A stretch of DNA of 64,000 nucleotides. It comes from Phallusia mammillata. Its lineage: Eukaryota. A model generated the notes under the pieces. That model was not told where the DNA came from. It was given only the letters and a program-made list of their open reading frames with translations, and did not search any database. Made by a program: the position numbers and the translations under genes. Position 1 is the stretch's first letter, and each line of letters opens with the position of its first letter. Below are positions 10,293 to 64,000 of this stretch, one piece after another. The DNA is taken from NCBI GenBank assembly GCA_965637545.1, contig OZ281497.1, positions 3,472,001 to 3,536,000 of the forward strand, in the 5' to 3' direction.

Positions 10293-13200
10293 ATGTCGAC
10301 TCGTCATCACGCTCACTTCTCCTCCGATGAGGACGTGCTGAGTGAACCAGTCTCATTTCGACATCTCCTTGCCCCAAGTCACATCATATCAGCCAGGATG
10401 CATCAACCTCATCCTTCACCTAAACCAGAGTAAGCTGATTATTAGAGATTTGAGCGTTAAAAATTAATTTGATAAGAAATATTTGTATTCGTAAGTTGTT
10501 TTCACGTAGGTTTTTCATTTTGATTGTTTTTTTAATGCTGGTTTTGCGGGATAATTATGTTGTATGAAATTCCTTTCAAGTATTTTCGGTCAAAAATGCG
10601 ATTGTTTGCAAGAATTGCAAAAATGCAAACAAATCATGCTAAAAGAAACCAAATCGAGATTTAGTAAACGAGAGACCGTTTCTTGTGGCTTCGGAAAATA
10701 TTTGGTTTCGAAATGTCAAATTTTTGTCCAACGGCCAAATGTTACCTTTTAAATTGTTTTTGGTCTAAACTGGAAAACCTTAGCCTTTAATAATTTGCAG
10801 AAAAATAATCCAATGCACAAAATGGGTTTAATGTGTTTTTAGCTGTGTAGAATCTGCTGTAAAATTGTCAAAAAGAGTAACTTGCTCAAAATAAGTAACT
10901 TAAAAAGATTACTTAAAAAGGGTAACAAAAACGTTAAGGCTTGTTTGTAAACGATGGTATTGCGACATATAGACAGTTATATACTTCAAATTACGGATTG
11001 GCAATAATTCCAAGCGACAATCAACTTTTAAAACTCGAAAACCTGACCATTATTTGTGTCTTCGCCAGACACGCCTCGACCTTGGACCGGAGACAAAATG
11101 GCAAAGCTCAAAAACAGGATTCCGGTCAGTACGGCACTCTTCCTCGCCACTCCAAGTCGACATACGCAAAACTACGGACCGTGGCAACATTTACAAACAT
11201 GTATTTCACGCATAAAGAAGCCGCAGACGAAGAACTGAACTTCCTAAGGTAAGGAGCAGGCATGAAAAGCCAGACAACCCCAATTTCCTGAATAAACGAA
11301 GTATAAATTAGGCCAAAAAGTTGAAGTTATGGCGCAAATGATGCCGAGTGTGAAGTCCCGAATTAAGTCCATTTTATTAAAACCACATCCCAAAATAACC
11401 ATATCTGGTCCCACCTTATTCAACCATACAACATCTAACCACATCCTACCATTTAATATCTGGTCTTAACCTTCTGACCATATCTGGTCCTACCTCCAAC
11501 CCGAACCAGACCCAAAATATCTGGTCCTACCTACAACTCTAACAGTATGTGGGGTAAATGGACGAGCCGGTATCAGAACCCACAACCCCGTGAACTTAAG
11601 GCGGCTGTATACTAACAACTCGGCCATCTTGGAAGATCGTTTCCTAATATGCCAAGTAGCAATATAAGTTGAAAAGCAGTACAATTTTATCAAAACTTTT
11701 GTTGTGGGTTGATCTTTGTACTAAAATAGTCGTACGTCTTAAAAACTGATAAAAATATGTGATTAGGGCTGTGGAAAACGGGGATATAGAAGAGGCGCGT
11801 GAGATCCTAGAAGATTACAACACTGATGTCGACTCCAGCGACACGTCGGCCGACGAACGCGTCGACATCGATGAAAAACCGAAAAAAGTCGAAATCTGTG
11901 CCAACGGAAAGAAACCAGCAAAGCCAGCCTTAAAGAAACCAAAGGAAACAAAACTCAACGGAGACACTAAGGAACCCGAAACCGTGATCGAAATGGACGT
12001 TGTCGAATCGCGAGACAGTCCTTCGGAGACAAAACCATCGGTAGCTACACGCTGGGCCTTAGCAAAGCGCCAAAAACGAGCCTCAAAGGCCCACCTGCCT
12101 GTTATAACCACCACTCGCCCGACCACTAGGCACAGCACCTCAAAGGGGAGAAAAGGTGGTAAATCACCCGGTCCTGACACAAGAAAGTTTAACAAGAACT
12201 GCCGGGACGAATGGGGACGTTCGGCACTTTTCATTGCTATGCTGAACAGGGATAGGGATATGATGACCATGCTCCTATCTTATAAGGTAAGCTCATGTAC
12301 ATGGAGTCACAACAGAAGCTTCTCGGACAATACTTATGGTTCTCAAGGCGCTAATGATTTATCTAATGATTAATTATCTGCTTTTTTGCATTTTTTTACT
12401 AGTCACCATTTATTTTTGCCTGTATAACCTAATAAATGCAACCCATGTCAATTTTCTTGAAAATTTAAAGAAAAATAAGGTGCAATTCAATTGTAACATT
12501 CTTTTAAGTTAGAAATCACATGTCGCAAAATCTATAAAATTTAAAATCAATTTTTAAAAAACAAGTCTCCGCATCAATTCAAATAGAACACAATGCAGCT
12601 ATATCCCACTACTAATTTGCATCGATTTGCAAATTACAAAACCAAACTAAATGCAAATAATTTCTAATTTGGTTGGGTTTTTATGAAATCAAAAACAATT
12701 TCAACAGATAAAGGACAATATTGGTGACATTTGTGTTGTAGGTGGAAATCGACGAATGCCTGTATCACGCCATTGACTTCGGCTTCTACGACATCGTTGA
12801 ACTGTTTATGGAACACGATACAAACCGGCAGCAAGTTATAACTGGGGAAGATTCATTTTACCCAGCAGGTAAACTGACATTTCCACGTAAAACCTTCTCA
12901 ATTAAAACAAATTTTCAGTGTATGATTTGAATAATTGAAAACGAAGCTTTAACTGACGATCACTGTTATTTAAAAAAAACGTTGATTGAAACAAAATTAG
13001 TCAGGTCTATTTTGTTTTAGCCAAGGGTTTATTGATCACAGATTTTTAATGCTCTTAGTTTGGAGTTACGTTTAATCTGGTTCAAGGCTGCATATATGTT
13101 TCCGTATGTTATTTTACGTAAGTCTTACAATCATGCAATCATAGAACCAAGTTATGCGAGAGCTATTTTTTTGTTTAAGATAAAAAAGAAAATCAGTTCA

Positions 13201-16200
13201 AAACCAATTCAGTGTATGCTGTTAAAAAACGGCCATTGCATAACTTAATGACAATTGGGCGAGACATTAAATTGACTTTGAATTATTTGTTGTACAAGTC
13301 ATGGCCATCATAACGCAGTTGTAAACTTATCCCATTATGTCATAGGAAACATGCAGATAAGATAGGCTGACTGTACTGTTTCTATTTCAACTTAGATATA
13401 TTGAATGCATAATCATTTGCATATAGAGGGGCATTAATAGTACAACCCGAAATAACAATAGCAGTCACAATTCTTTCACATTCGCGTCACAATTAATAAT
13501 AGGATGTTCTAAATTTTACTTTTTATGTAGAAAAACGGATATGGCTCGACATAAAAAAGTTTTGCTTGATGTTAAATGCACGTTGTCTACCTAACTACCA
13601 AAATAAAAACTCCGCCAGGCCAGACATTTGCACGAAGTCAAAATAGACCCATTGTTTTGTAGGAAATGCTATTAAAAGTCGCATATGTAGGCCAAGGATA
13701 ATACTCTTTGAAAAAGTTTCATTAATCCTTTATCCCTTCCATGACCTTTAAAGTGTTATTAACGGCACTGTACATTGTTCACGAAGCAGTAAAATAAATC
13801 TTAATATCCAGTAAACTAAAACATACGTTTAGTCAGTGATGACGTCAAGTCACGTTTAATAAAGTAAAGTGACCTCATATCCTAAATTTAATTTTGTTCC
13901 AAATGTTACGCAAAACCAGGATTTTTCGAGACTGCTGTAAACGTTAACAAGTACATGATTTAAAGTCTCTTAATTTGTAGGTTTAAACTTGAAATATTGT
14001 TCCTTTAAAGGGAAAACCACTATTGTGCAGTAAAAACGTAGATTGATTAAAACGTAGGCAAAACGATTTGAAGCAAATTATTTTGCTGTAATTTCGCCTA
14101 AAAGCGCACGAAACGTTGTTGTTTTACACCAGGGGGTGCACAACTTGTGGGCATGCACTTCAATACTAAAAAGTGTTTTTTGTCCAGCAGTAGGGTCCCA
14201 GATACATCATAATATCAATGTCAGTTTTAGTCCAAATCTGGGGTTTCAAGTTCAAAAAAGCGGGTATTCGCCGGTTGTGATTAAAGTACATTAGTATTTT
14301 AGGTATATCACTCGTATGCTAGTTGTACCAGAGTTGTATATATGTCTAAAATTGGGCACCGAAACCGAAATTACAAACCCAAATAACGGTCGAAACCCTA
14401 ATCGTTTTTAAAAAGCCCGCTTAGGCCCGAAAGTTTGATTTACAGGTCTACACATGAAAGCCAACGGAAAGACAAATACAAACACAATTGACAATGGCCT
14501 TAAATAAGTCGTTTTAGTGCTGTTGGGCATTGGGTTAAGTCCAGGAAATAGCTACTTAATATAACAAAAAATAAGGACATATATTGTGATGTCAGGCCCG
14601 AATGGACCGACTTACAACGCTTGAGTTGTGCATCTGACTAAAATTCGACCCCATAGTTTTAACATCCATTTTCTACATCTAGGATTGACACCAATTCAAC
14701 TCGCTGCACACAAGAATGATTACGTCATGTTGAAGATCCTACATTCACACGGATTCAAGTAAGCGCAAGATTTTTAACGCCCTTGTGAAAACATACACTA
14801 CAGAACAGACGAATTTTTGCGCTATTTTTTCCCTATTTGGACAATACCAATGTAAAAGCATAGAGCAAATAAATGAAAAGCTGCAGACCGTGCACACTGT
14901 TTCGACCTATAAGGTCTCATTAATACCGCCGGTCTGTTGGAATGCCGTTGGATGGCTAGACTATGCCAATACAAGTACTGTCACCAGTTGTACTGATAAG
15001 ACCTTATAGGTCGAAACAGTGTGCACTGTCTGCAGCTGGATAATATCACCTTTGTTACAACCGACAAGGTATAGATACAAAATCGTAATTATTTTTAGCA
15101 ACATTTTTTCGTTATAGGTACACAAGACACGGACTTAAATAGTAGCTTTAGTACAAAACAAATTGCCAGCAAAGTTAAATAAAACGTATTCGTTTTATTG
15201 AACAGACGTTTTCGACTTTATATTTCACTGATGATGACAAAAGTTTTTTTGTCCAAACGTCTGTTCAATAAAATGAATACGTTTTATTCAACTTCGCTGG
15301 CAATGTTTTTGTGTATTTTGTGACATTTATATTGATTTGTCTTTGCATATGTAAGTAGACACTTAATTCGCCAAAATCCTCCATCTTTTACCTTCTTCAA
15401 CATTTTCGACCCTAGTTGTTTCGCAAAAGTCAAGAGCGCTTCCTCGCCTAAACAATGAGCGGAATTTTTTGCCCACAACAATTTTTTTTTTTAAGAATCG
15501 TACGCTTGACCAACCATGCAGAGCAAACCAAACAATCCTGGGACAAAATACCCCGAAACAAAACTCTTTCTAAATAGACCAAAACCAAAAAAGTTTCGAA
15601 CAATTTTCGTATTATAAACACATAACTTACTTTAGCAATTTGCAGATTTTTATATTGCTTTTTGCAGTAACCTAGTCTGTTGTGTAGGTCTAACGTTTGT
15701 AATCACAACATACCTGTCATTCTGTATTGAGCTGCAATACTACTGCCAGTTAGGGTTATTTCATGGCGTCTTTTGCACCCAATCTTATACAACTAAAAGC
15801 GAAAACGTACAAAAATTATAACCTTTGCGAGTTTTACAAAATTTCTGTTTGAAAATGTAAAGTAAATGCAAACCGACGAGGCTTACCACTGACATTCTTG
15901 TCCCCACAATAATAGCACAATGCCATTTTAGTTCAGCAGCATGCAGTAATGCCCTTTTAAATAAGATTAAAACACAACCCAAAAATTGGCTTAATTTAAG
16001 CTGTATACTGCAATCATTGTGTGACTGTCAAAAAATGTTTACGTAATTCTAACGTTATTTGACCCAAAACTGTGACATTGCAGTGTTTTGTAGTTCCTGA
16101 CAAAATGCCTCCTAGTTTGTTAGATGCAAATAGTCATGAATTGTTATTTCAGAATATCAAGCCAAAATACGTTGAAACGGCTATTTTCGCGTCGAAGCGA

Positions 16201-22200: not shown

Positions 22201-24914
22201 TAACGAATACCCATTTTTACAGTCAAACCACAAGTTTAATTATAACTGTTTGCATTTAGGTCCACTGCAACTATCCCTTGACAAGATGATCGTGGACACA
22301 ATCCGGTTTCTCTTCCTTTTCGTCATTACTTTCTTTGCTTGTGCTCTTGCCATGACTCAGCTATATTGGGCCTACGGTGAAGTAAGTCATCATTTTTCGT
22401 TTCTAATGTACAAAATTCCCAATCAGCAAGCAAAGAGATTGTAAATTAGTATATTGGGACATAAATCAAAGAGAACACCGATGAAAAGTTTTGTGTGTAG
22501 CTACTAATCAGACATCTTTGTGAATGTGGCCATGGTTTTTTGAGATTGTTACTTTAAAACAAACTGAAAACGAAAAAATCTTACAGGTTTAAAGGATATC
22601 AAAAGTACGAGAATAACTCCCAAATGGTTTGACATGCTATTAAAAATCACCTCGCGTGCCAAACTCGGTATAGTGTTCCGTTCCTCTGTGATAACACTGT
22701 AGGTTTTCCGGCCACACAAAAACACATACCTTTCACAAATCACAGTACGCCAGGCCCATTAAAGCCGTTATACTGAATCAGCCGGTCACCAAGCATTCAC
22801 CCCATATGGCAAGGCGTAGACTAGAAAAATCTAGCCTGCAGTGGGATTCGAACCCACGACAGGAGGTTGTCGTACGTGGAAAGCACTAAAGGTTTTCCAG
22901 CCACACAAAAACACATTCCTTTCAAAAACTGATAACTTTTTTAGGCCAGGATCGAGCGGATACGATTGGAACGGAATCTAACCTCATTAGGGCAAAAGGT
23001 TTGTGAAGACGGTGATGGCTTTAACGACAGTAGTCCGTGTTCTCCTGTATATTCAAGTGTGGGGAATTCGTTACTGCAACAGTACTGGACGTTGTATGGA
23101 TACGGATGGAGACTTGAACCGCCTGTTGCAGTGAAAATACCGGAACAAGCATCCAAGGTAAAGACCGTTCATGTTGAAGTTTCTTGTTTAGGCTTACCTG
23201 ATACAATAATTTTGTTGACACTAATAAATCAAACTGGAGTTACCCACAAAACAGTACCTCAAGGTCTTTGCGACATTAAATTGTAAAAAATGCGTTTTAG
23301 TAAATCAATTTTCGACCAAATTGGGAAAATATGCAGCTTCCTTTATTTTTTTTGCTTTGGGTGTCATAAAGTTGCCTTGATCTTGACACACTTGCTGTTG
23401 GACACGAACCTAAAACATACGAACCAAAGGCTCATCTATACTACAGTTTTCATGTGACTGCATTTCATCAGTTAAGAAGATTTCCTAAACAATGCCTTTA
23501 TGTGTTCACAGTTGCCCATTACAGAATGGGTCGGTCTCTGTATCTCAATGTTCTTTCACTTATGGGCGGTGGTGATCATGCTCAACATGCTCATCGCTAT
23601 GATGTCCCATTCATTTGACCGGGTTCGAGACAATGCCGAGGTTGAATGGAAATATCACCGATCAGGAATGTGGATGAAGTTTATCAGAAAAGGGATTTAT
23701 CCACGACCACCGCCAATGAATCTCATCCCTTCACCCAGAGATGTCAGAAACTTCCTCGATTTCATAAAGGTACCAACTTTCTCAAATTTTCTTTTTTTGT
23801 GTTTAGTTCCATTTCAATCATAGTACGCGCGGTCTATTGACAGCCTGTGTAGATCAGTTGGTAGAGCGCACGTGCGGGAACGGCTGTCTTGGGTTCGAAT
23901 CTCACCATATCCTGTGCCTTGCCATACGGAATGCTTGGTATCCGTTAGAGTGCATCAACGCTTCGGGGTTTATACCAAAAATAAATTTATGTGCATTTTA
24001 AATATTGCCAACTATTTCTGCACTGAGGCGACGCTTTTGTAACTGTTATAAAAAGACCAAGTCTCTTTGAGGCAAGGGTTCCCAATTAAAATTGGAATTT
24101 TGAACTTACAAAGGAACATTCTTCCCTAAAAAAATCATTCATTGAATGAAATGCAGACTTATTGTAAATAATGTTGAATTTGTCAATACTTAAAACTTGT
24201 AAGTTTCGTTTCTACATTTCGACTTGTTTTTACAGAAAGGTATTCCAAAGTGCTGCCTGCGTGGCTCTGACCATCCAAAACGAAGCAACGCACAAAGACC
24301 GGGTAGCACCGATCACGAAACGGAGAATCACAAATACAGACAATCTATTGCAAGAATCACAAACAGGTAAAAAGACACATCCGCAAAAGGTTTTGTCTAC
24401 AGAATTTAGAATTATACTGGAGGCAAAACGTACTTTGGGTACTAATTGCAAGCATTCGCTATTACAAAAAACATTTTATTAGTCTTTCGCTCCTCGAAAC
24501 GGTTATCACAATTCATTCTACCCCTAGAATACAATTACTAAAAAGGTTAGTTAAACTGAGCACTTTGACACAGTCAGAAGCGTGGACATGGAAAGCTTTC
24601 TTAGGAATGAGGATTAATTGAAACCATAACCTTACGTTTCATTATATGCTTATAGATTCTTTATTCTGGCACTGTTTCGCATCTCTTCTACATTGGTGCT
24701 TCGTACCCAAGCGTTATATAGAATGTGGAAAAGGTGTTTTTGACTATCAGGACTAACTAAACATTGCCTACATTTAAACAGATACCTGCGTCGGTATTTG
24801 CTACCGGATTTTAAGCACGATGATGCTGAAACTACAATCAACAATCGGTCTACCAGCCAGCAGTCTTACAGAGGCCGACACAGCTTCAGTAACGAAGACT
24901 GCAGCAGCAACTGA
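10293..24914 (+). CDS. TRPC: TRPC-family (canonical TRP / TRP-gamma-like) cation channel, divergent; 17 coding exons, about 998 aa
   Basis: Hand-spliced GT-AG exons with consistent phases: 10293-10429, 11069-11248, 11767-12286, 12742-12868, 14683-14758, 16153-16346, 16814-16920, 18102-18197, 19595-19812, 20132-20321, 21192-21359, 21733-21859, 22260-22381, 22945-23157, 23512-23769, 24236-24366, 24782-24914 (2997 nt, TGA 24912-24914). TRPC hallmarks in the correct order: ankyrin repeats (ELNFLRAVENGD, NCRDEWGRSALFIAM, GLTPIQLAAHKNDY), YYRARASPAY, KRFVAHDNCQ, S1-S6, GPLQLSLDKMI (S4-S5 linker), LNMLIAMMSHSF (S6), EWKYHR (TRP box), PPPMNLIPSP. The start codon is uncertain because the first exon follows an acceptor at 10266. 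Confidence 0.9.
11340..11628. repeat. Element with short inverted ends and internal ATATCTGGTC repeats (TRPC intron 2)
   Basis: GATGCCGAGTG (11340-11350) versus CAACTCGGCCATC (11616-11628); ATATCTGGTC at 11401, 11456, 11480 and 11517. Confidence 0.5.
14329..14623. mobile_element. hAT-like MITE with GGCCCG/ACCCGA subterminal motifs (TRPC intron 4)
   Basis: Ends CAGAGTTGTA ... TACAACGCTTG; flanks AGTTGTAC / AGTTGTGC (7/8). Related motif-rich segments lie at about 35950-36110, 45214-45380 and 48300-48370. Confidence 0.55.
14879..14931 (-). ncRNA. Decayed inverted copy of the same hammerhead motif
   Basis: The minus strand reads TTAATGA-GACCTTATAGGTC-GAAAC-AGTGTGCACG-GTC-TGCAGCT. Arm 14879-14917 matches the reverse complement of 14999-15037 at 38/39 nt. 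Confidence 0.7.
14984..15039 (+). ncRNA. Type I hammerhead ribozyme motif with a G8A core variant, in TRPC intron 5
   Basis: Stem I CCAGTTGTA/TGCAGCTGG (9 bp, 2 GU); core CTGATAA (14993-14999); stem II GACC-TTATA-GGTC; GAAA; stem III CAGT-GTGC-ACTG; GTC triplet with the cut site after 15030. Confidence 0.8.
15162..15304 (+). mobile_element. Foldback element containing a degenerate minimal hammerhead (Penelope-like remnant)
   Basis: 50-nt inverted arms 15162-15211 and 15255-15304 (47/50). Inside: CTGATGA (15228-15234), T, stem II GACAAAA-GTTT-TTTTGTC, CAAA (G12C) and the palindromic ACGT-C. The left arm reads GTCGAAAACGTCTG on the minus strand. Confidence 0.6.
17885..18010. repeat. Palindromic dispersed repeat (copy 2, TRPC intron 7)
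   Basis: Same arms as 9065-9178 and the same GTGTTCCAAA at the same 28-nt spacing. Confidence 0.75.
21020..21095 (-). mobile_element. Single end of a hAT MITE (TRPC intron 10)
   Basis: The minus strand reads CAGTGGTTATTGACCAGGGGGGCACGCCCCCTAGGGAGGCGTC; I did not find the partner end. Confidence 0.4.
22052..22213. repeat. Minisatellite with an approximately 31-bp unit, about 5 copies (TRPC intron 12)
   Basis: Unit approximately AGTTTGACARRTATCCATTTTGACAGTCCTC, with degenerate units upstream to about 21965. Confidence 0.8.
22741..22886 (-). mobile_element. tRNA-derived SINE, family B, 5'-truncated (TRPC intron 13)
   Basis: Minus-strand B-box GGTTCGAATCC (22844-22854) and body GCCTTGCCATATGGGGTGAATGCTTGGT (22788-22815); flanked by an approximately 45-bp direct repeat. 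A B-box-only fragment also occurs at about 47916-47936. Confidence 0.65.
23843..23945 (+). mobile_element. tRNA-derived SINE, family B (TRPC intron 15)
   Basis: A-box TAGATCAGTTGG 23850-23861; B-box GGTTCGAATCT 23892-23902; body GCCTTGCCATACGGAATGCTTGGT shared with the 22.8-kb copy. Confidence 0.7.
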
Positions 24915-29976: not shown

Positions 29977-32176
<2,200 letters not shown>

Positions 32177-59675: not shown

Positions 59676-61894
59676 TCTGTATCGTTCCAAAAACATCGCC
59701 TTTTTTGGACGTGTTGGTTGTGTGCGGTAATACACAACACTTGAATAATAATCACACGGGTTCCTAGCCACAACCGAAATTGCCTACAACCAACAGCCCT
59801 TGCAAACCTCACAGCTCGTAGCTCCCCCGGCGGTCAATTCCGGTTTGTTTAACCCAGGGATTAAAAGCTTAAGCCGCCGCGATGGCGACAATGTTGTATA
59901 ACTGTCGCGAGTTGATGTATGTGCCTTGATCTCCGAAACGCAGAGCATGGATATAAGCTAGGCAACGCAATTTGAAGTCAAAGAGAGCACGGCTTCAATG
60001 TAGTATAGATTCGTGTATAGCGCAAAGGGAAGTGAGATGTATTGTAAGCTAGAAAACAACTAACAAAATAGTTTTCAGCTAGAATAAGTTTAAAAACATA
60101 CCCAGCTGTAAAGAATCATAAGCGGTGTGGCACTGTGTTGATTGATTGTGTTGCATAACATTGATCCCTAATTCGTGCTACGTTTAACAAACATGGTATT
60201 CTAACATGTAAAGCAGGAATGCGTGAAGGTTTAACAGAAGCAACGACATTATTGAGGCAGACAGACTGAAAACAATACCTTCTACGAATTCAATGTCACT
60301 GTTGTTGTCGAACATACAACCCTTAAGTCAACAGTAGTCACAGTCGGATAGGCAAATAAACAATATGATTGTTCGCCCAAATGTCAGGCACAACAAAAAA
60401 TATTACCATAGAATTTCGAATTGTACACTGTACATACATTTTCTCAGTTAACAGAGTAACTATAAATGTCTTGTCGGTAATTCATACTGAAAGTGTCATC
60501 AAATAAGTATATGCAGTTAAAGGTTTGCGATCAAGGGTATTTTAAAGACCTTTATAAGTGTGTTAAGCAGAGTTTGGTTATTTTTTTATTGACAGACGAA
60601 ACAATGACTTGCCGTTGCCCATTTGATAGGCGACGTAGCCTCAAAACCGATCGTTAGACCACCGCGTCACACTGGTAATTTCTTAATTGAACAGCCAAAG
60701 GAAAGGCACACGGCGAATGAGGCTCGCCAAAGCAGAAGGCCAGAGCTTTCTATCACAACACGGCATTAGAGTAACAATAGACGTCAATGAAAACAACCCC
60801 TTGAAAGCTGTTCGGTGTAGTGGCGTAAGCTTTGCCAGGTTGAACAAGAAGCTCAGGCTAAAAAAGGTTGCAGCGTTCTGCACCTGGAATAATAACTTTG
60901 TCACGATAAGCCGTGGAACAAATGTAAAGCACGTGTAGTCAAAAACAGTGCTACGTCAACGATACGTCACAATGAGAATGTGAGGACACACGTTGTCGAA
61001 AAAATATGTTTTAAACTAAAAAGGTTGAAAACATGTTTTTGAGACTTAGTTTTTGTGTTGAAAACTTGAGAGCTATGTTTAGAAGTCATAGTTTTAGCTT
61101 TTCTGCATTCCTACATTTGGAATCATCTGATCTCTAGTATATTGCCTGTTCGGCTATCGAGTAAAACAGTAGTACAATGTACAAGTGAGACACGAGTGAT
61201 GGTATCGATTGATAAAGTCGGCAGCTACTAATGTGGCGTTCAGAAACCACAGTTAGCACAACAGCCATCAGATACAAGTGGGTGTGCTTTGTTGCTACAA
61301 ACGCCACATATTTGTAACTATCAATAGAGTTACCAAATTTTAATTTGGTGTTGATCAGAAGCCAATGTCATACTTCAAATGCCAAGAGGTCGAAAATTTA
61401 AAGGGTTTTCAGACTAGGATACTTTTGTAATTTTTTGTGTTGAGTTAGTTGTGTGAAATATTCGGTCTCCCAACGTTATTAAACTCAATCGACAACGCAG
61501 ATTTAGTGATAACCATCGGTAATGGAGATTTTGCATGTGGACTCTACCAGGAATTGATTATTCTTAAATTTACGTGTGAATAATCAAACATTTTCTATTT
61601 CTACAGTGGTTTAGATACACACACACAAACCTATGTTGGTTTGTCGGCGCCTTTGCAGCGCATTGATAAAAAAATGCCCGTGTAACTTAACACGAATCCA
61701 ATACACCACTTGCTGCTGATTCAACAGCCGTCGTAGCCTTATCTCCGCAGCGGTAGGCAGAGCACTTGTCGATCTCTTAACAGACCCTTGCCTGTCACCG
61801 TACTGTCACTACCTCAAGGAGCCAGACTGCTTCAAGAACCGCTTATCCTCAACTTGACTCTATTGCTACTTAAGCTAGTATAAGATTGTAAGAA

Positions 61895-63806
61895 ATGGAA
61901 GCTGTATTTTGCATTGTACTTGGGATTGCTGCCACGGCGTATGCAGAAGGAACAACTTCATTTGGAAGCATTGCAAATGAAACTGCAAAGGCTGCTGTAG
62001 ACATCTGTGGTGACGCTATTGAAGAAAGTGCGCAGCCGGTTACCGATGATGGTGCGATGGTTGTAATGAACATTGTACTCTCCTTGATTATCGGCATCGT
62101 ATCGTTCGTGACCATTGTTGGTAACCTAATGGTCTTCGCATCTGTGATGATATTCCGTAAGCTACAGACCATACCGAACATGTTTATCCTTAGTCTCGCA
62201 GTAGCGGACTTAATCATGGGTGGATTTGTGCTTCCGATCGGTGCTCACGATGTAATAGGACATCGCTGGCTTCTTGGTCACTTTTTCTGTGACATTTGGA
62301 CTTCCGTAGACGTCCTCAGCGTTACAGCAAGCATTGGAACCCTCTGCATTATTTCTCTTGACCGTTACGTGGCTATCACAATGCCCTTCCAGTATTCATT
62401 GAGAATGACTCGGCCGAGGGCACGATGTATCATAGGAGCAGTTTGGATCATTTCGGCAGCGACAGCGTTTATTCCAATACATCTCGGGTGGTGGAAGTCG
62501 GAAAAGCCTTGCGATGTAAAGTGTTACGAGGATCCTGAATGCTGTGAGTTCCGAACCAATCCTACGTACGGAGTCGTGTCGTCTTGTATATCCTTCTACA
62601 TTCCGCTAATTGTAATGGTCATCGCATACAGCATCGTATTTAAAAGTAAGTGGGATTCGTTTTGCAGGATTAGATTGGTAGAAAACCTTGCTATTCTGAA
62701 CTTCGTAAAGGGTTAAAGCGAATGTACTGCAAGAATTTAGCACATAATAGGGTATTGTGGTTTTCACACCACAATAACTTCGTTAGGTTAAGTGTGTAAC
62801 GTGAAAAAGGTTGTAGCTGTTGAAAATTTAAAACACATTTTTTGTTTTTTCCACTAAAATATAAAGGTTTTATTTTATTGATTGTGATTAGTTCAAAGCA
62901 TTTTATGAAGTTATCTTCCCACAGACGGATAGTAATTTTCGCTTGTTTTTGGTACAGTCGCAATACAGAAACGTTCAAAGATCCGAAATAGAGAGGGGGT
63001 TTACCGTCGAGCTTCGATGCCCGGAACACGAAGCATGCTGTGGGGAAGGGGAGAATACAGAGCTATCTTCACTATGGGGATCATCATGGGCACTTTCGTC
63101 ATATGCTGGTTGCCATTTTTCATTATCAACGTTTTGTCGGTAAGGGTTTCTTTGTGCAAAGAAGTTACAGTGAAAATTTAGGCACCAGTCTGTCAGTTAT
63201 ATACCATTGCCGACAGAGCAAAACAAAAAGTTTTTGAAATATGCCTGACAAAAACAATGTATTCAGTCAGGCAGTCGGTGATTACTTTGGGTTATTAAAG
63301 TAAGTTTTTCCAAAGTGTACCTCGTTTTGATTGGCGCATTTTGTCAATAATAGTTTTTAGGTATTAAATAAAGTGAAGTGTTTGTTCATATTTAACAAAA
63401 AAAACATTCGCTACGTGGCTGTAATGTTTTTTAACAAAGATACATAACTTTGCATAAACTAAAAAAAATGCTGAAATATAAGTTGACATGGTGTCAATAC
63501 AATACCTACAACTCCTAGCATTTGCACCACAAAGAAAGTGTTTCAAGATAGACCCTGGTAACTTATAGCCACAATTTCAACACCATTCTGATCTTCATCA
63601 GTGGCAAACTACAAACACAGTCGATAATCCAAAATCGATCGCTTTTTTGCAGGTGTTTTGCGACGACTGTGTGCCCAAAGACGTATTTTTGGGATTTAAC
63701 TGGCTTGGCTACGTAAACAGCTTCTTCAATCCCATTATCTACAGCCACAGTAAAGAGTTTCGACGGGCTTTTAAGCGAATTCTGCACTGTGGACTTTGCA
63801 GAGACG
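61895..63806 (+). CDS. ADRB: Beta-adrenergic receptor-like class A GPCR (3' end runs off the window)
   Basis: Exons 61895-62645, 62958-63139, 63653-63806 (donor GACG|GTAAGG; the frame also stays open to 64000). TM3 [27 protein letters not shown]2 [15 protein letters not shown]5 [15 protein letters not shown]6 [19 protein letters not shown] and TM7 [16 protein letters not shown] match vertebrate beta-AR motifs. Upstream acceptor TTTCTACAG| at 61606. Confidence 0.9.
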
Positions 63807-64000
63807 GTAAGGGCGCCTGGCTTTTTTTGTTCATTAAGTTTCGCGGCTTATTTGAACGGAGCCCGAACGGACGATTGTTAGTTGAAAAGCTGGACTCGCA
63901 TTCATCAGAATATCTCACCAAATGGCGCCACACCAGAATTCTTAGAAATGCAGATTTTCGTAGAAAACTTTATCAGTGGCCAAAGTCGACATGGTGTTTC

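What the first reader, a model, noticed from the sequence alone, without database searches (positions are those of the whole stretch)
14879..15039. Near-canonical type I hammerhead ribozyme in the sense strand of TRPC intron 5, paired with an inverted decayed twin
Seen: 9-bp stem I, CUGAUAA, stem II GACC/GGUC, GAAA, 5-bp stem III and a GUC cleavage triplet (cut after 15030), about 225 nt downstream of exon 5 and in pre-mRNA orientation. The only core deviation is G8A. An inverted copy (38/39-nt arm) lies just upstream with different lesions (UUAAUGA), so the two copies together reconstruct CUGAUGA. Established: C3-G8 pairing is needed for activity, and such minimal hammerheads mark Penelope-like elements and retrozymes. 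Inference: an intronic ribozyme that could sever the channel pre-mRNA is doubly muted, by G8A and by a 39-bp hairpin with its twin. An A14998G (or C14993T) allele, or alternative folding, could make it a cis-acting switch on channel expression.
Basis: partly seen in the sequence, partly recalled or inferred. Interest (0 to 1): 0.8.

Follow-up and report, generated by a model that had tools for sequence, protein, structure and literature searches.

The report
Dead hammerhead pair from a retrozyme insertion
The hammerhead-ribozyme look-alike and its inverted twin are real, but they are one old, decayed insertion of a jumping element present about a thousand times in this genome, and nothing indicates that it controls the ion-channel gene it sits in.

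Summary
Window 14984-15037 (+) has every part of a type I hammerhead except G8 (A14998). An inverted, more damaged copy lies at 14879-14932 (-).

It is not a locus-specific device. The 187-bp block 14851-15037 is flanked by an 11-bp target duplication and belongs to a large repeat family. The 38-nt catalytic core with helices II and III occurs 326 times with no change, and 1,062 times with up to 3 changes. The G8A-only form occurs 4 times.

Longer copies show a non-coding unit of about 280 nt bounded by direct hammerheads, in tandem at 280-282 nt. That is the layout of an animal non-LTR retrozyme.

The window copy has the insertion signature published for Penelope-like elements: two 5'-truncated copies head to head, a tail of about 30 nt on one end only, and a target duplication. 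Of 26 neighbouring pairs of intact cores among the first 100 listed, 19 have this same orientation.

The core lesions fit neutral decay of roughly 6-11%. The whole block folds into a hairpin of -91 kcal/mol, and a probable RNA contig shows the host TRPC exon spliced normally. The proposed switch on channel expression has no support.

Other windows of this genome gave the scan similar findings earlier. A second Penelope-type hammerhead relic lies just downstream.

The parts
14681..14758 (+). Host exon, an ankyrin-repeat part of a TRPC-like channel gene. The element lies in the intron downstream of it.
   Evidence: A 3725-nt contig of run X9 (RNA by guess) covers exactly 14681-14758 and runs on into other exon sequence. 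The exon scores as an ankyrin repeat. A downstream exon, 23476-23820, matches TRPC4/5 at E 6e-19.
14839..14849 (.). Left copy of the target-site duplication (GGACAATACCA).
   Evidence: Matches 15038-15048 (GGATAATATCA) at 9 of 11 positions, differing by two C/T transitions. Other family copies have 10-13-bp duplications.
14851..14878 (-). The 'tail': unit positions about 8-35 (...GCUUUUACA terminus), present at this end only.
   Evidence: Alignment to the 280-nt unit. The same terminus appears in many copies. A one-sided 30-40-bp tail is a published PLE signature (PMC8557442, PMC11167929).
14879..14932 (-). Inverted, 5'-truncated copy carrying the decayed hammerhead twin. Lesions: C3U and G5A in the core, one helix III mismatch, and three stem I changes.
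   Evidence: last row of alignment A1. It no longer folds as a hammerhead (-12.2 kcal/mol, z 0.09).
14933..14983 (+). Head-to-head junction plus the remnant of the unit body upstream of the ribozyme (about unit positions 176-226).
   Evidence: Local alignment to the unit. It is nearest to the subfamily seen in L030.
14984..15037 (+). Sense-strand type I hammerhead relic. Its core is intact except G8A (A14998). The would-be cleavage site is after C15030. The element ends at ...GUCUGCAGCU.
   Evidence: The 38-nt core differs from the family form by one base. The G8A-only form occurs 4 times genome-wide, against 326 for the intact form.
15038..15048 (.). Right copy of the target-site duplication (GGATAATATCA). 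Its first two G extend stem I by chance.
   Evidence: The family consensus continues with UA at these positions and does not pair there.
15115..15310 (+). A separate, second Penelope-type head-to-head insertion. It carries a minimal hammerhead (about 15226-15262) inactivated by G12C.
   Evidence: Inverted-repeat arms 15156-15211 and 15255-15310, 91% complementary. Intact relatives read GUCGAAACGUC. The family has 316 first-look candidates, and one copy lies beside a GIY-YIG ORF.

Best explanation
Window 14851-15037 is a single old retrotransposition scar of a non-coding, hammerhead-bearing retroelement of the animal non-LTR retrozyme type. The family unit is about 280 nt.

**Inferred mechanism.** A Penelope-like reverse transcriptase/GIY-YIG endonuclease, supplied in trans, made the insertion. 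It cut both target strands and primed on both, which left three marks:
- two 5'-truncated copies of the ribozyme-bearing end lying head to head;
- a tail of about 28 nt on one side only;
- an 11-bp target duplication.

At insertion both arms carried the active-looking core CUGAUGA...GAAA...GUC. Both have since decayed neutrally, the sense arm by G8A and the antisense arm by C3U and G5A.

**Expected behaviour today.** In the pre-mRNA the two arms should pair into a hairpin stem of about 50 bp and leave with the intron. The relic has no demonstrated effect on the TRPC gene.

**Shown:** homology, copy numbers, termini, target duplications, tandem units, folding energies, and splicing of the flanking exon.

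**Inferred:** mobilisation by PLE enzymes, self-cleavage of intact copies, and neutrality of this copy.
For: **A large family with intact cores.**
- A DNA search with the element gave 1349 first-look candidates.
- The 38-nt core is exact at 326 places and within 3 mismatches at 1,062 places. The reversed-pattern control gave 0.
- The G8A-only form occurs 4 times.

**Retrozyme layout.**
- Copies in L044 and L040 show hammerhead, about 280-nt unit, hammerhead.
- Direct neighbours are spaced 269-282 nt, including a run of three at C3:1385518, 1385800 and 1386082.
- No ORF of 150 aa or more lies in or beside the copies examined. The unit has stops in all six frames.

**Retrotransposition marks.**
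- Target duplications are 10-13 bp and differ in length and sequence.
- Start points are permuted or truncated.
- There are two preferred termini about 30 nt apart...GUCUGCA(GCUU) and ...GCUUUUACA.
- This matches the two internal RT start sites and the one-sided tail reported for PLEs (PMC11167929; PMC8557442).

**Head-to-head as the norm.** Among the first 100 places I count 19 -/+ pairs, 1 +/- pair and 6 direct pairs.

**PLE enzymes are present.** GIY-YIG matches lie in open frames of up to 973 aa, with 434 first-look candidates.

**Decay level.**
- The arms are 87% complementary.
- The sense arm has 3 of 54 changes from consensus, all transitions. The twin has 6 of 55.
- The target duplication is 9 of 11 identical.

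**Folding and splicing.**
- The whole block folds as a hairpin of -91 kcal/mol, z -11.3.
- A 3725-nt probable RNA contig joins exon 14681-14758 to its neighbouring exons.
- DNA contigs from three other studies run from unique sequence into the left arm with 0-1 differences, so the insertion is not private to the assembly.
Against: - No autonomous PLE sharing this family's end was found. Only 10 GIY-YIG loci with 1.5-kb flanks could be checked, and their ends carry a different, minimal hammerhead.
- Self-cleavage and circular RNA of the family were not tested.
- Rfam's hammerhead models score even intact copies below threshold (22.8 against 34 bits; 26.8 against 48.5 bits).
- There is no covariation within the family (90.3% of cells paired, against 90.2% in shuffles), because the copies are too alike.
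- The 38-nt core of the sense arm is better kept (1 of 38 changes) than the rest of the element. That could be chance or weak constraint.
- The allele at 14998 in other individuals could not be read, because the contigs collapse in the repeat.
Confidence: 0.85

Rival explanations
1. One reading: the intronic sense-strand hammerhead is a latent cis-acting switch. A back-mutation at 14998, a C14993T change giving a U3-A8 pair, or escape from the hairpin would let it cut the TRPC pre-mRNA and lower channel expression.
For: - The sense arm folds as a perfect three-way junction when alone.
- It is one base away from a core that is kept exact at 326 places.
- U3-A8 cores exist in nature (PMC4209133).
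- The core is better preserved than its surroundings.
Against: - It is one of about 1,000 copies.
- The twin arises from the insertion mechanism, not from selection (PMC8557442).
- The antisense arm, which has no bearing on the pre-mRNA, is more damaged, as neutral decay predicts.
- The upstream arm is transcribed first and gives a hairpin of -91 kcal/mol, against -18.8 for the ribozyme fold.
- The exon is spliced normally in the one probable RNA contig.
- No conservation or polymorphism data exist.
Confidence: 0.03
2. The block is a miniature inverted-repeat DNA transposon (MITE) whose terminal inverted repeats happen to encode hammerheads. A transposase moves it by cut and paste.
For: - Palindromic shape with 55-nt arms.
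- Short size of about 190 bp, high copy number and flanking duplications.
Against: - Duplications vary in length (10-13 bp).
- The two ends are not equivalent: there is a tail on one side only.
- Inner breakpoints differ from copy to copy.
- Many copies are single, or are direct tandems of a 280-nt unit, rather than palindromes.
- All of these marks are described for PLE-type retrotransposition.
Confidence: 0.04
3. The long intronic hairpin formed by the two arms is processed into small RNAs (endo-siRNA or miRNA-like). These act on the many family transcripts, or on the host gene, so the palindrome is the functional unit and not the ribozyme.
For: - A very stable hairpin (-91 kcal/mol, z -11.3).
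- Family palindromes score sub-threshold against several miRNA precursor models, for example mir-1294 at 58 bits against a gathering score of 90.
- Family sequences are present in probable RNA contigs.
Against: - All the miRNA hits are below gathering score, as any long hairpin would give.
- No small-RNA data were available.
- This copy's arms have already drifted to 87% complementarity.
- This reading is compatible with the main explanation and does not replace it.
Confidence: 0.05

Closest known systems
Animal non-LTR retrozymes (Cervera & de la Pena 2020, PMC7229834; Li et al. 2026 preprint, 10.64898/2026.07.22.740005)
   Same: - A type I hammerhead in a non-coding unit of a few hundred nt.
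- Direct tandem copies.
- Dispersed monomers.
- Target duplications longer than 4 bp.
- Co-occurrence with PLEs.
- Frequent intronic copies.
   Different: - Helix III here has 5 bp with a 4-nt loop, so it is stable as a monomer. Most metazoan type I hammerheads have 1-2 bp and are thought to need dimers (PMC4209133).
- Circular RNA was not shown here.
- The window copy itself is not a tandem. It is a head-to-head pair of fragments.
Penelope-like element insertion structures: pLTR, inverted 5'-truncated copy, one-sided 30-40-bp tail (Craig et al. 2021, PMC8557442; Frangieh et al. 2024, PMC11167929)
   Same: - Head-to-head 5'-truncated copies.
- A tail of about 28-33 nt on one end only.
- Two preferred termini, which match two RT start sites.
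- Variable target duplication.
- A hammerhead in the repeated end.
   Different: - This family has no RT/GIY-YIG ORF, so it would be mobilised in trans.
- The autonomous PLEs sampled in this genome carry a different, minimal hammerhead (GAAACGUC).
- No shared end was found.
Minimal PLE hammerheads found as pairs on opposite strands (Cervera & de la Pena 2014, PMC4209133)
   Same: That paper reports dual hammerheads about 100-700 bp apart on opposite strands. It also reports massive genomic spread as truncated copies, and natural U3-A8 core variants.
   Different: Those motifs lack a real helix III. The window's first element has a full helix III. The second element, at 15115-15310, is of the minimal kind.
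Conserved intronic hammerheads of amniotes (HH9 and HH10; de la Pena & Garcia-Robles 2010, cited from my own knowledge)
   Same: A sense-strand hammerhead inside an intron of a protein-coding gene.
   Different: Those are single-copy, have an intact core and are conserved across species at orthologous sites. This one is a mutated copy of a repeat of about 1,000 members, with no conservation evidence.

Membership tests
Hammerhead ribozyme, type I | Complete conserved core: C3 U4 G5 A6 N7 G8 A9, G12 A13 A14, A15.1-U16.1, and C17 (any base but G) before the cut. | tested here: not met
   The window sense copy has A at position 8 (14998). The twin has U3 and A5. The family consensus and 326 genomic copies do meet this feature.
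Hammerhead ribozyme, type I | Three helices around the core, with helices II and III closed by loops and helix I open. | tested here: met
   The minimum-energy fold of 14984-15039 is exactly this junction. Across 39 family copies, 90.3% of cells are paired in register, against 15-37% when the partners are slid.
Hammerhead ribozyme, type I | Score at or above Rfam's gathering threshold (RF00163 Hammerhead_1). | tested here: not met
   The window gives no RF00163 hit up to E 10. Intact family copies reach 22.8 bits against a threshold of 34.
Hammerhead ribozyme, type I | Compensatory base changes that support the helices. | tested here: inconclusive
   The covariation score is 0.063, against 0.057 in shuffles (106 of 500 shuffles as high). 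The copies are 94% alike, so there is no power.
Hammerhead ribozyme, type I | Site-specific self-cleavage giving 5'-OH and 2',3'-cyclic phosphate ends. | not testable with these tools
   Only contigs were available, and they cannot show RNA ends.
Animal non-LTR retrozyme | Direct tandem repeats of a short non-coding unit (about 170-400 nt), each with a type I hammerhead. | tested here: met
   Met for the family. The unit is 280 nt between cut sites in L044. Spacings of 280-282 nt occur, including three in a row. There are stops in all frames. The window copy itself holds only two inverted fragments.
Animal non-LTR retrozyme | Accumulation of unit-length circular RNA. | not testable with these tools
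   Probable RNA contigs contain family sequence. Circularity and RNA ends cannot be read from contigs.
Penelope-type (PLE) insertion | An inverted 5'-truncated copy adjacent to a second copy, with a 30-40-bp tail at one end only and a target duplication. | tested here: met
   The window shows a tail at 14851-14878, arms at 14879-14932 (-) and 14984-15037 (+), and an 11-bp duplication. The same layout recurs in L002-L019.
Penelope-type (PLE) insertion | An RT plus GIY-YIG ORF within the element, or a sequence link to an autonomous PLE. | tested here: not met
   The family has no ORF. PLE ORFs exist in the genome. The 10 sampled loci share no sequence with this family, apart from one independent insertion in L048. 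The sampling was small.

The most novel reading that the evidence does not exclude
This copy, or sense-strand intronic copies of the family in general, is not neutral. A one-base revertant at 14998, or an allele weakening the hairpin, would restore self-cleavage inside the TRPC pre-mRNA and create heritable variation in channel dosage. Selection against such cutting would then be the reason why both sense-strand hammerheads in this intron carry a single disabling core change (G8A here, G12C at about 15250).
Probability: 0.03. Interest if true: 0.6.

Novelty: new member of a known kind. Interest (0 to 1): 0.2.

Why it matters
For this locus it matters little. It is a dead transposon scar in an intron, and the proposed regulatory switch has no support.

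The family behind it is of modest interest.
- It is a retrozyme-type element with hundreds of intact, monomer-stable hammerheads.
- Its insertions carry the head-to-head, one-sided-tail signature of Penelope-like elements. That is direct structural support for the recent proposal that animal retrozymes are mobilised by PLE machinery.
- I found no paper in the searched library linking hammerheads or PLEs to ascidians or Ciona.

Earlier notes of this scan call the genome a sea squirt and report the same kinds of structure in other windows. This is therefore a repeat sighting, not a first one.

Tried and rejected
1. **Rfam on the whole window at gathering score:** nothing. In E-value mode the only hit was a chance-level RAGATH-1-hammerhead. 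Even intact relatives stay below threshold. Rfam therefore cannot decide membership here.

2. **Covariation within the family:** no signal, because the copies are 94% alike.

3. **Search for a coding master element.**
   - Loci around the longer copies have no ORF of 150 aa or more.
   - Two repeats 5.7 kb apart on C7 turned out to be a segmental duplication, not a full-length element.
   - Ten GIY-YIG loci share nothing with this family except an independent insertion with its own duplication in L048.
I did not try to get round it.

4. **Pfam TRP_2 search of the genome:** it hit only another chromosome. The host gene was instead identified exon by exon.

5. **Reads.** Only contigs were on offer. 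They break inside the repeat, so three things could not be assessed: the allele at 14998, RNA ends at 15030/15031, and locus-specific intron expression. Family-derived pieces in the probable RNA run show only that some copies are transcribed.

6. **MITE reading:** rejected on the asymmetric ends, the variable duplications and the tandem units.

7. **G8A as a subfamily marker.**
   - The G8A-only core is rare, with 4 copies.
   - A related subfamily (L030, L032) carries G8A together with G12A.
   - The window's internal segment is closest to that subfamily.
   - Inheritance of G8A from a source copy is therefore not excluded.
Full report
**1. The observation**

On the + strand:

| Feature | Coordinates |
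|---|---|
| Stem I, 5' strand CCAGUUGUA | 14984-14992 |
| CUGAUAA (A14998 at core position 8) | 14993-14999 |
| GACC, loop UUAUA, GGUC | 15000-15012 |
| GAAA | 15013-15016 |
| Helix III, 5 bp with loop GUGC | 15016-15029 |
| GUC | 15028-15030 |
| Stem I, 3' strand UGCAGCUGG | 15031-15039 |

- Folded alone, this strand adopts exactly the hammerhead junction as its minimum-energy structure (-18.8 kcal/mol, z -2.66).
- The repeat finder gives inverted arms 14879-14933 and 14983-15037, 55 nt, 87% complementary, 49 nt apart.
- The twin reads UUAAUGA on the minus strand, carries a helix III mismatch, and no longer folds as a hammerhead (z 0.09).
- Rfam finds nothing in the window at gathering score. 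In E-value mode there is only a 14.3-bit RAGATH-1-hammerhead match at E 8.6, and no Hammerhead_1 match.

**2. It is a copy of a large repeat family**

- A search of the window's own genome (240 Mb) with 14860-15060 gave 1349 first-look candidates. Among those scored, dozens align over the whole palindrome at 74-82% identity.
- Many copies carry CUGAUGA in both arms.
- The 38-nt string from CUGAUGA to GUC, which holds the core and helices II and III, has these genome-wide counts:

| Form | Copies | Control |
|---|---|---|
| Exact | 326 (162 + 164) | 0 |
| Up to 3 mismatches | 1,062 | 0 |
| Same string with G8A only | 4 (window included) | 0 |

It is simply the family consensus (alignment A1).
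- Intact copies still score below Rfam thresholds: Hammerhead_1 22.8 bits against 34, and Hammerhead_3 26.8 against 48.5.
- The copies are too alike (94% mean column identity) to show covariation: 90.3% of cells are paired against 90.2% in shuffles. The register is specific, however, because slid partners give only 15-37%.

**3. What the family is**

- Longer copies (L036, L039, L037, L040, L044) show that the palindrome is not the basic unit.
- In L044 and L040 two direct hammerheads bound a unit of about 280 nt. Starting from the cut site, it runs UGCAGCUUAUCAUUU...GCUUUUACA, then a body of about 190 nt, then CCAGCUGCA-CUGAUGAG...GUC.
- Exact cores occur as direct neighbours at 269-282 nt, including three in a row on C3.
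- The unit has stops in all six frames.
- No ORF of 150 aa or more lies in or beside the copies examined.
- This is the layout of animal non-LTR retrozymes: short non-coding tandem units with a type I hammerhead and target duplications longer than 4 bp (PMC7229834). A 2026 preprint argues that these derive from Penelope-like elements.
- One difference stands out. Helix III here is a stable 5-bp stem, whereas most metazoan type I hammerheads have 1-2 bp and are thought to act as dimers (PMC4209133).

**4. How the copies were inserted**

- Copies are flanked by duplications of 10-13 bp that differ in length and sequence. Examples are ATAATGTTTATG in L017, AGCTTAGGTCTA in L016 and AAACATGAAATGT in L048.
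- Their inner ends are truncated at different points.
- Their outer ends fall at two preferred termini about 30 nt apart...GUCUGCA(GCUU), which is 4-8 nt past the ribozyme cut site, and ...GCUUUUACA.
- Most short copies are head-to-head pairs in which only one side carries the extra stretch of about 30 nt.
- Among the first 100 exact-core places, I count 19 -/+ pairs within 500 nt, one +/- pair and six direct pairs.
- This is the published signature of Penelope-like elements:
  - 'an inverted 5'-truncated copy ... immediately adjacent', plus 'a 30- to 40-bp extension (tail)' often at one end only (PMC8557442);
  - in vitro cleavage and extension of both target strands, with reverse transcription starting at two adjacent internal sites whose interval is the tail (PMC11167929);
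  - dual hammerheads 100-700 bp apart on opposite strands (PMC4209133).
- The genome encodes many PLE proteins. GIY-YIG matches lie in open frames of up to 973 aa, with 434 first-look candidates.
- The PLE ends I could inspect carry a different, minimal hammerhead (GAAACGUC) and share no sequence with this family. Mobilisation in trans by a PLE is therefore inferred, not shown.

**5. The window copy in this frame**

Alignment to the unit divides the block as follows:

| Window span | What it is |
|---|---|
| 14839-14849 | Left target duplication, GGACAATACCA |
| 14851-14878 | Tail, minus-strand sense |
| 14879-14932 | Minus-strand hammerhead copy, truncated just upstream of stem I |
| About 14933-14983 | Junction, plus about unit positions 176-226 on the plus strand |
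| 14984-15037 | Plus-strand hammerhead, ending at GUCUGCAGCU |
| 15038-15048 | Right target duplication, GGATAATATCA |

- The two duplication copies match at 9 of 11 positions and differ by two transitions.
- The two G at 15038-15039 belong to the duplication and lengthen stem I to 9 bp by chance. The consensus continues with UA there and has a 7-bp stem I.
- Two further stem I pairs are G-U, caused by C-to-T changes.
- Against the consensus, the sense arm has 3 of 54 changes, all transitions and including G8A. The twin has 6 of 55.
- At about 8% divergence, the chance that at least one of about 13 essential core bases is hit is roughly two in three (my arithmetic). One lesion in the sense core and two in the antisense core need no special explanation.
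- The internal segment is closest to a subfamily (L030, L032) that carries G8A together with G12A. G8A may therefore even have been inherited from the source copy.

**6. The host gene and the 'switch' idea**

- The gene on the + strand is TRPC-like. Exon 23476-23820 (S6 and TRP box) matches TRPC4/5 structures at E 6e-19. Exons at 11753-12370 and 14625-14759 score as ankyrin repeats.
- I searched exon by exon and did not join a spliced model. I did not check the intron number.
- A 3725-nt contig of run X9 (RNA by guess) covers exactly 14681-14758 and continues on both sides into other exon sequence. The intron with the relic is therefore removed.
- DNA contigs from three other studies run from unique sequence into the left arm with 0-1 differences, so the insertion is shared.
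- The contigs break in the repeat. The allele at 14998 and any RNA ends at 15030/15031 could not be read.
- The full block folds into a hairpin of -91 kcal/mol (z -11.3) that buries the ribozyme. The upstream arm is transcribed first.
- The hairpin is a consequence of how such elements insert. It is not a second safety catch.
- Nothing points to regulation of the channel.

**7. Verdict**

- The ribozyme ancestry and the Penelope/retrozyme link are right.
- The regulatory reading is unsupported.
- The locus is an ordinary decayed copy. The family is a new member of a known kind.
- Earlier notes of this scan on other windows of the same genome describe the same head-to-head scars and tandem retrozyme-like units. 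I re-derived both here from the sequence.
- Those notes call the organism a sea squirt. I did not verify that.

Noticed in passing
window 15115-15310: A second Penelope-type head-to-head insertion lies about 80 nt downstream of the first, in the same intron. Its arms are 15156-15211 and 15255-15310, 91% complementary, with extra repeated sequence at the left end only. Its + strand holds a minimal hammerhead (about 15226-15262) that reads GUCCAAACGUC, where intact relatives read GUCGAAACGUC (G12C). The family has 316 first-look candidates, and one copy lies about 200 nt from a GIY-YIG ORF, that is, at the end of an autonomous PLE.
   Followed up: partly
family copies in L002-L044; genome places: One preferred DNA terminus of the retrozyme family lies only 4-8 nt past the hammerhead cut site (GUC|UGCA...GCUU). 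The other lies about 30 nt further on (GCUUUUACA). This looks like the two internal RT start sites reported for a lizard PLE, seen here in a non-coding element.
   Followed up: partly
L048 (G000:C1:4270906-4274013), minus strand about 1100-1160: A PLE ORF (GIY-YIG C-terminus) is followed by its own minimal hammerhead with CUGAAGA...GGACGAAACGUC. A separate retrozyme-family insertion with its own 13-bp duplication lies about 0.8 kb further downstream. The arrangement recurs at C1:4446260/4447549, probably through segmental duplication.
   Followed up: partly
L030 and L032 (G000:C8:18488010 and 18539547): A subfamily whose two arms both read CUGAUAAG...GGUCAAAAC (G8A plus G12A). This suggests that copies with a dead ribozyme were still retrotransposed, in line with the report that hammerhead mutants do not block PLE insertion in vitro (PMC11167929).
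   Followed up: no
G000:C5:24.9-27.3 Mb (L021-L025 and further hits): At least a dozen near-identical copies of one decayed family member, with identical flanks, spread over about 2.4 Mb of contig C5. This looks like a large array of segmental duplications.
   Followed up: no
window 29977-32173 (+) and 61892-64000 (+): An actin gene in several exons lies downstream of the TRPC-like gene. A rhodopsin-type GPCR-like ORF lies near the window's end.
   Followed up: no
window 14993-15037, run X9: Short contigs of a probable RNA run match the hammerhead core at high word depth (up to about 360). One is a 3118-nt contig that begins with the core. Some family copies are therefore likely transcribed, but the pieces are not specific to this locus.
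   Followed up: no
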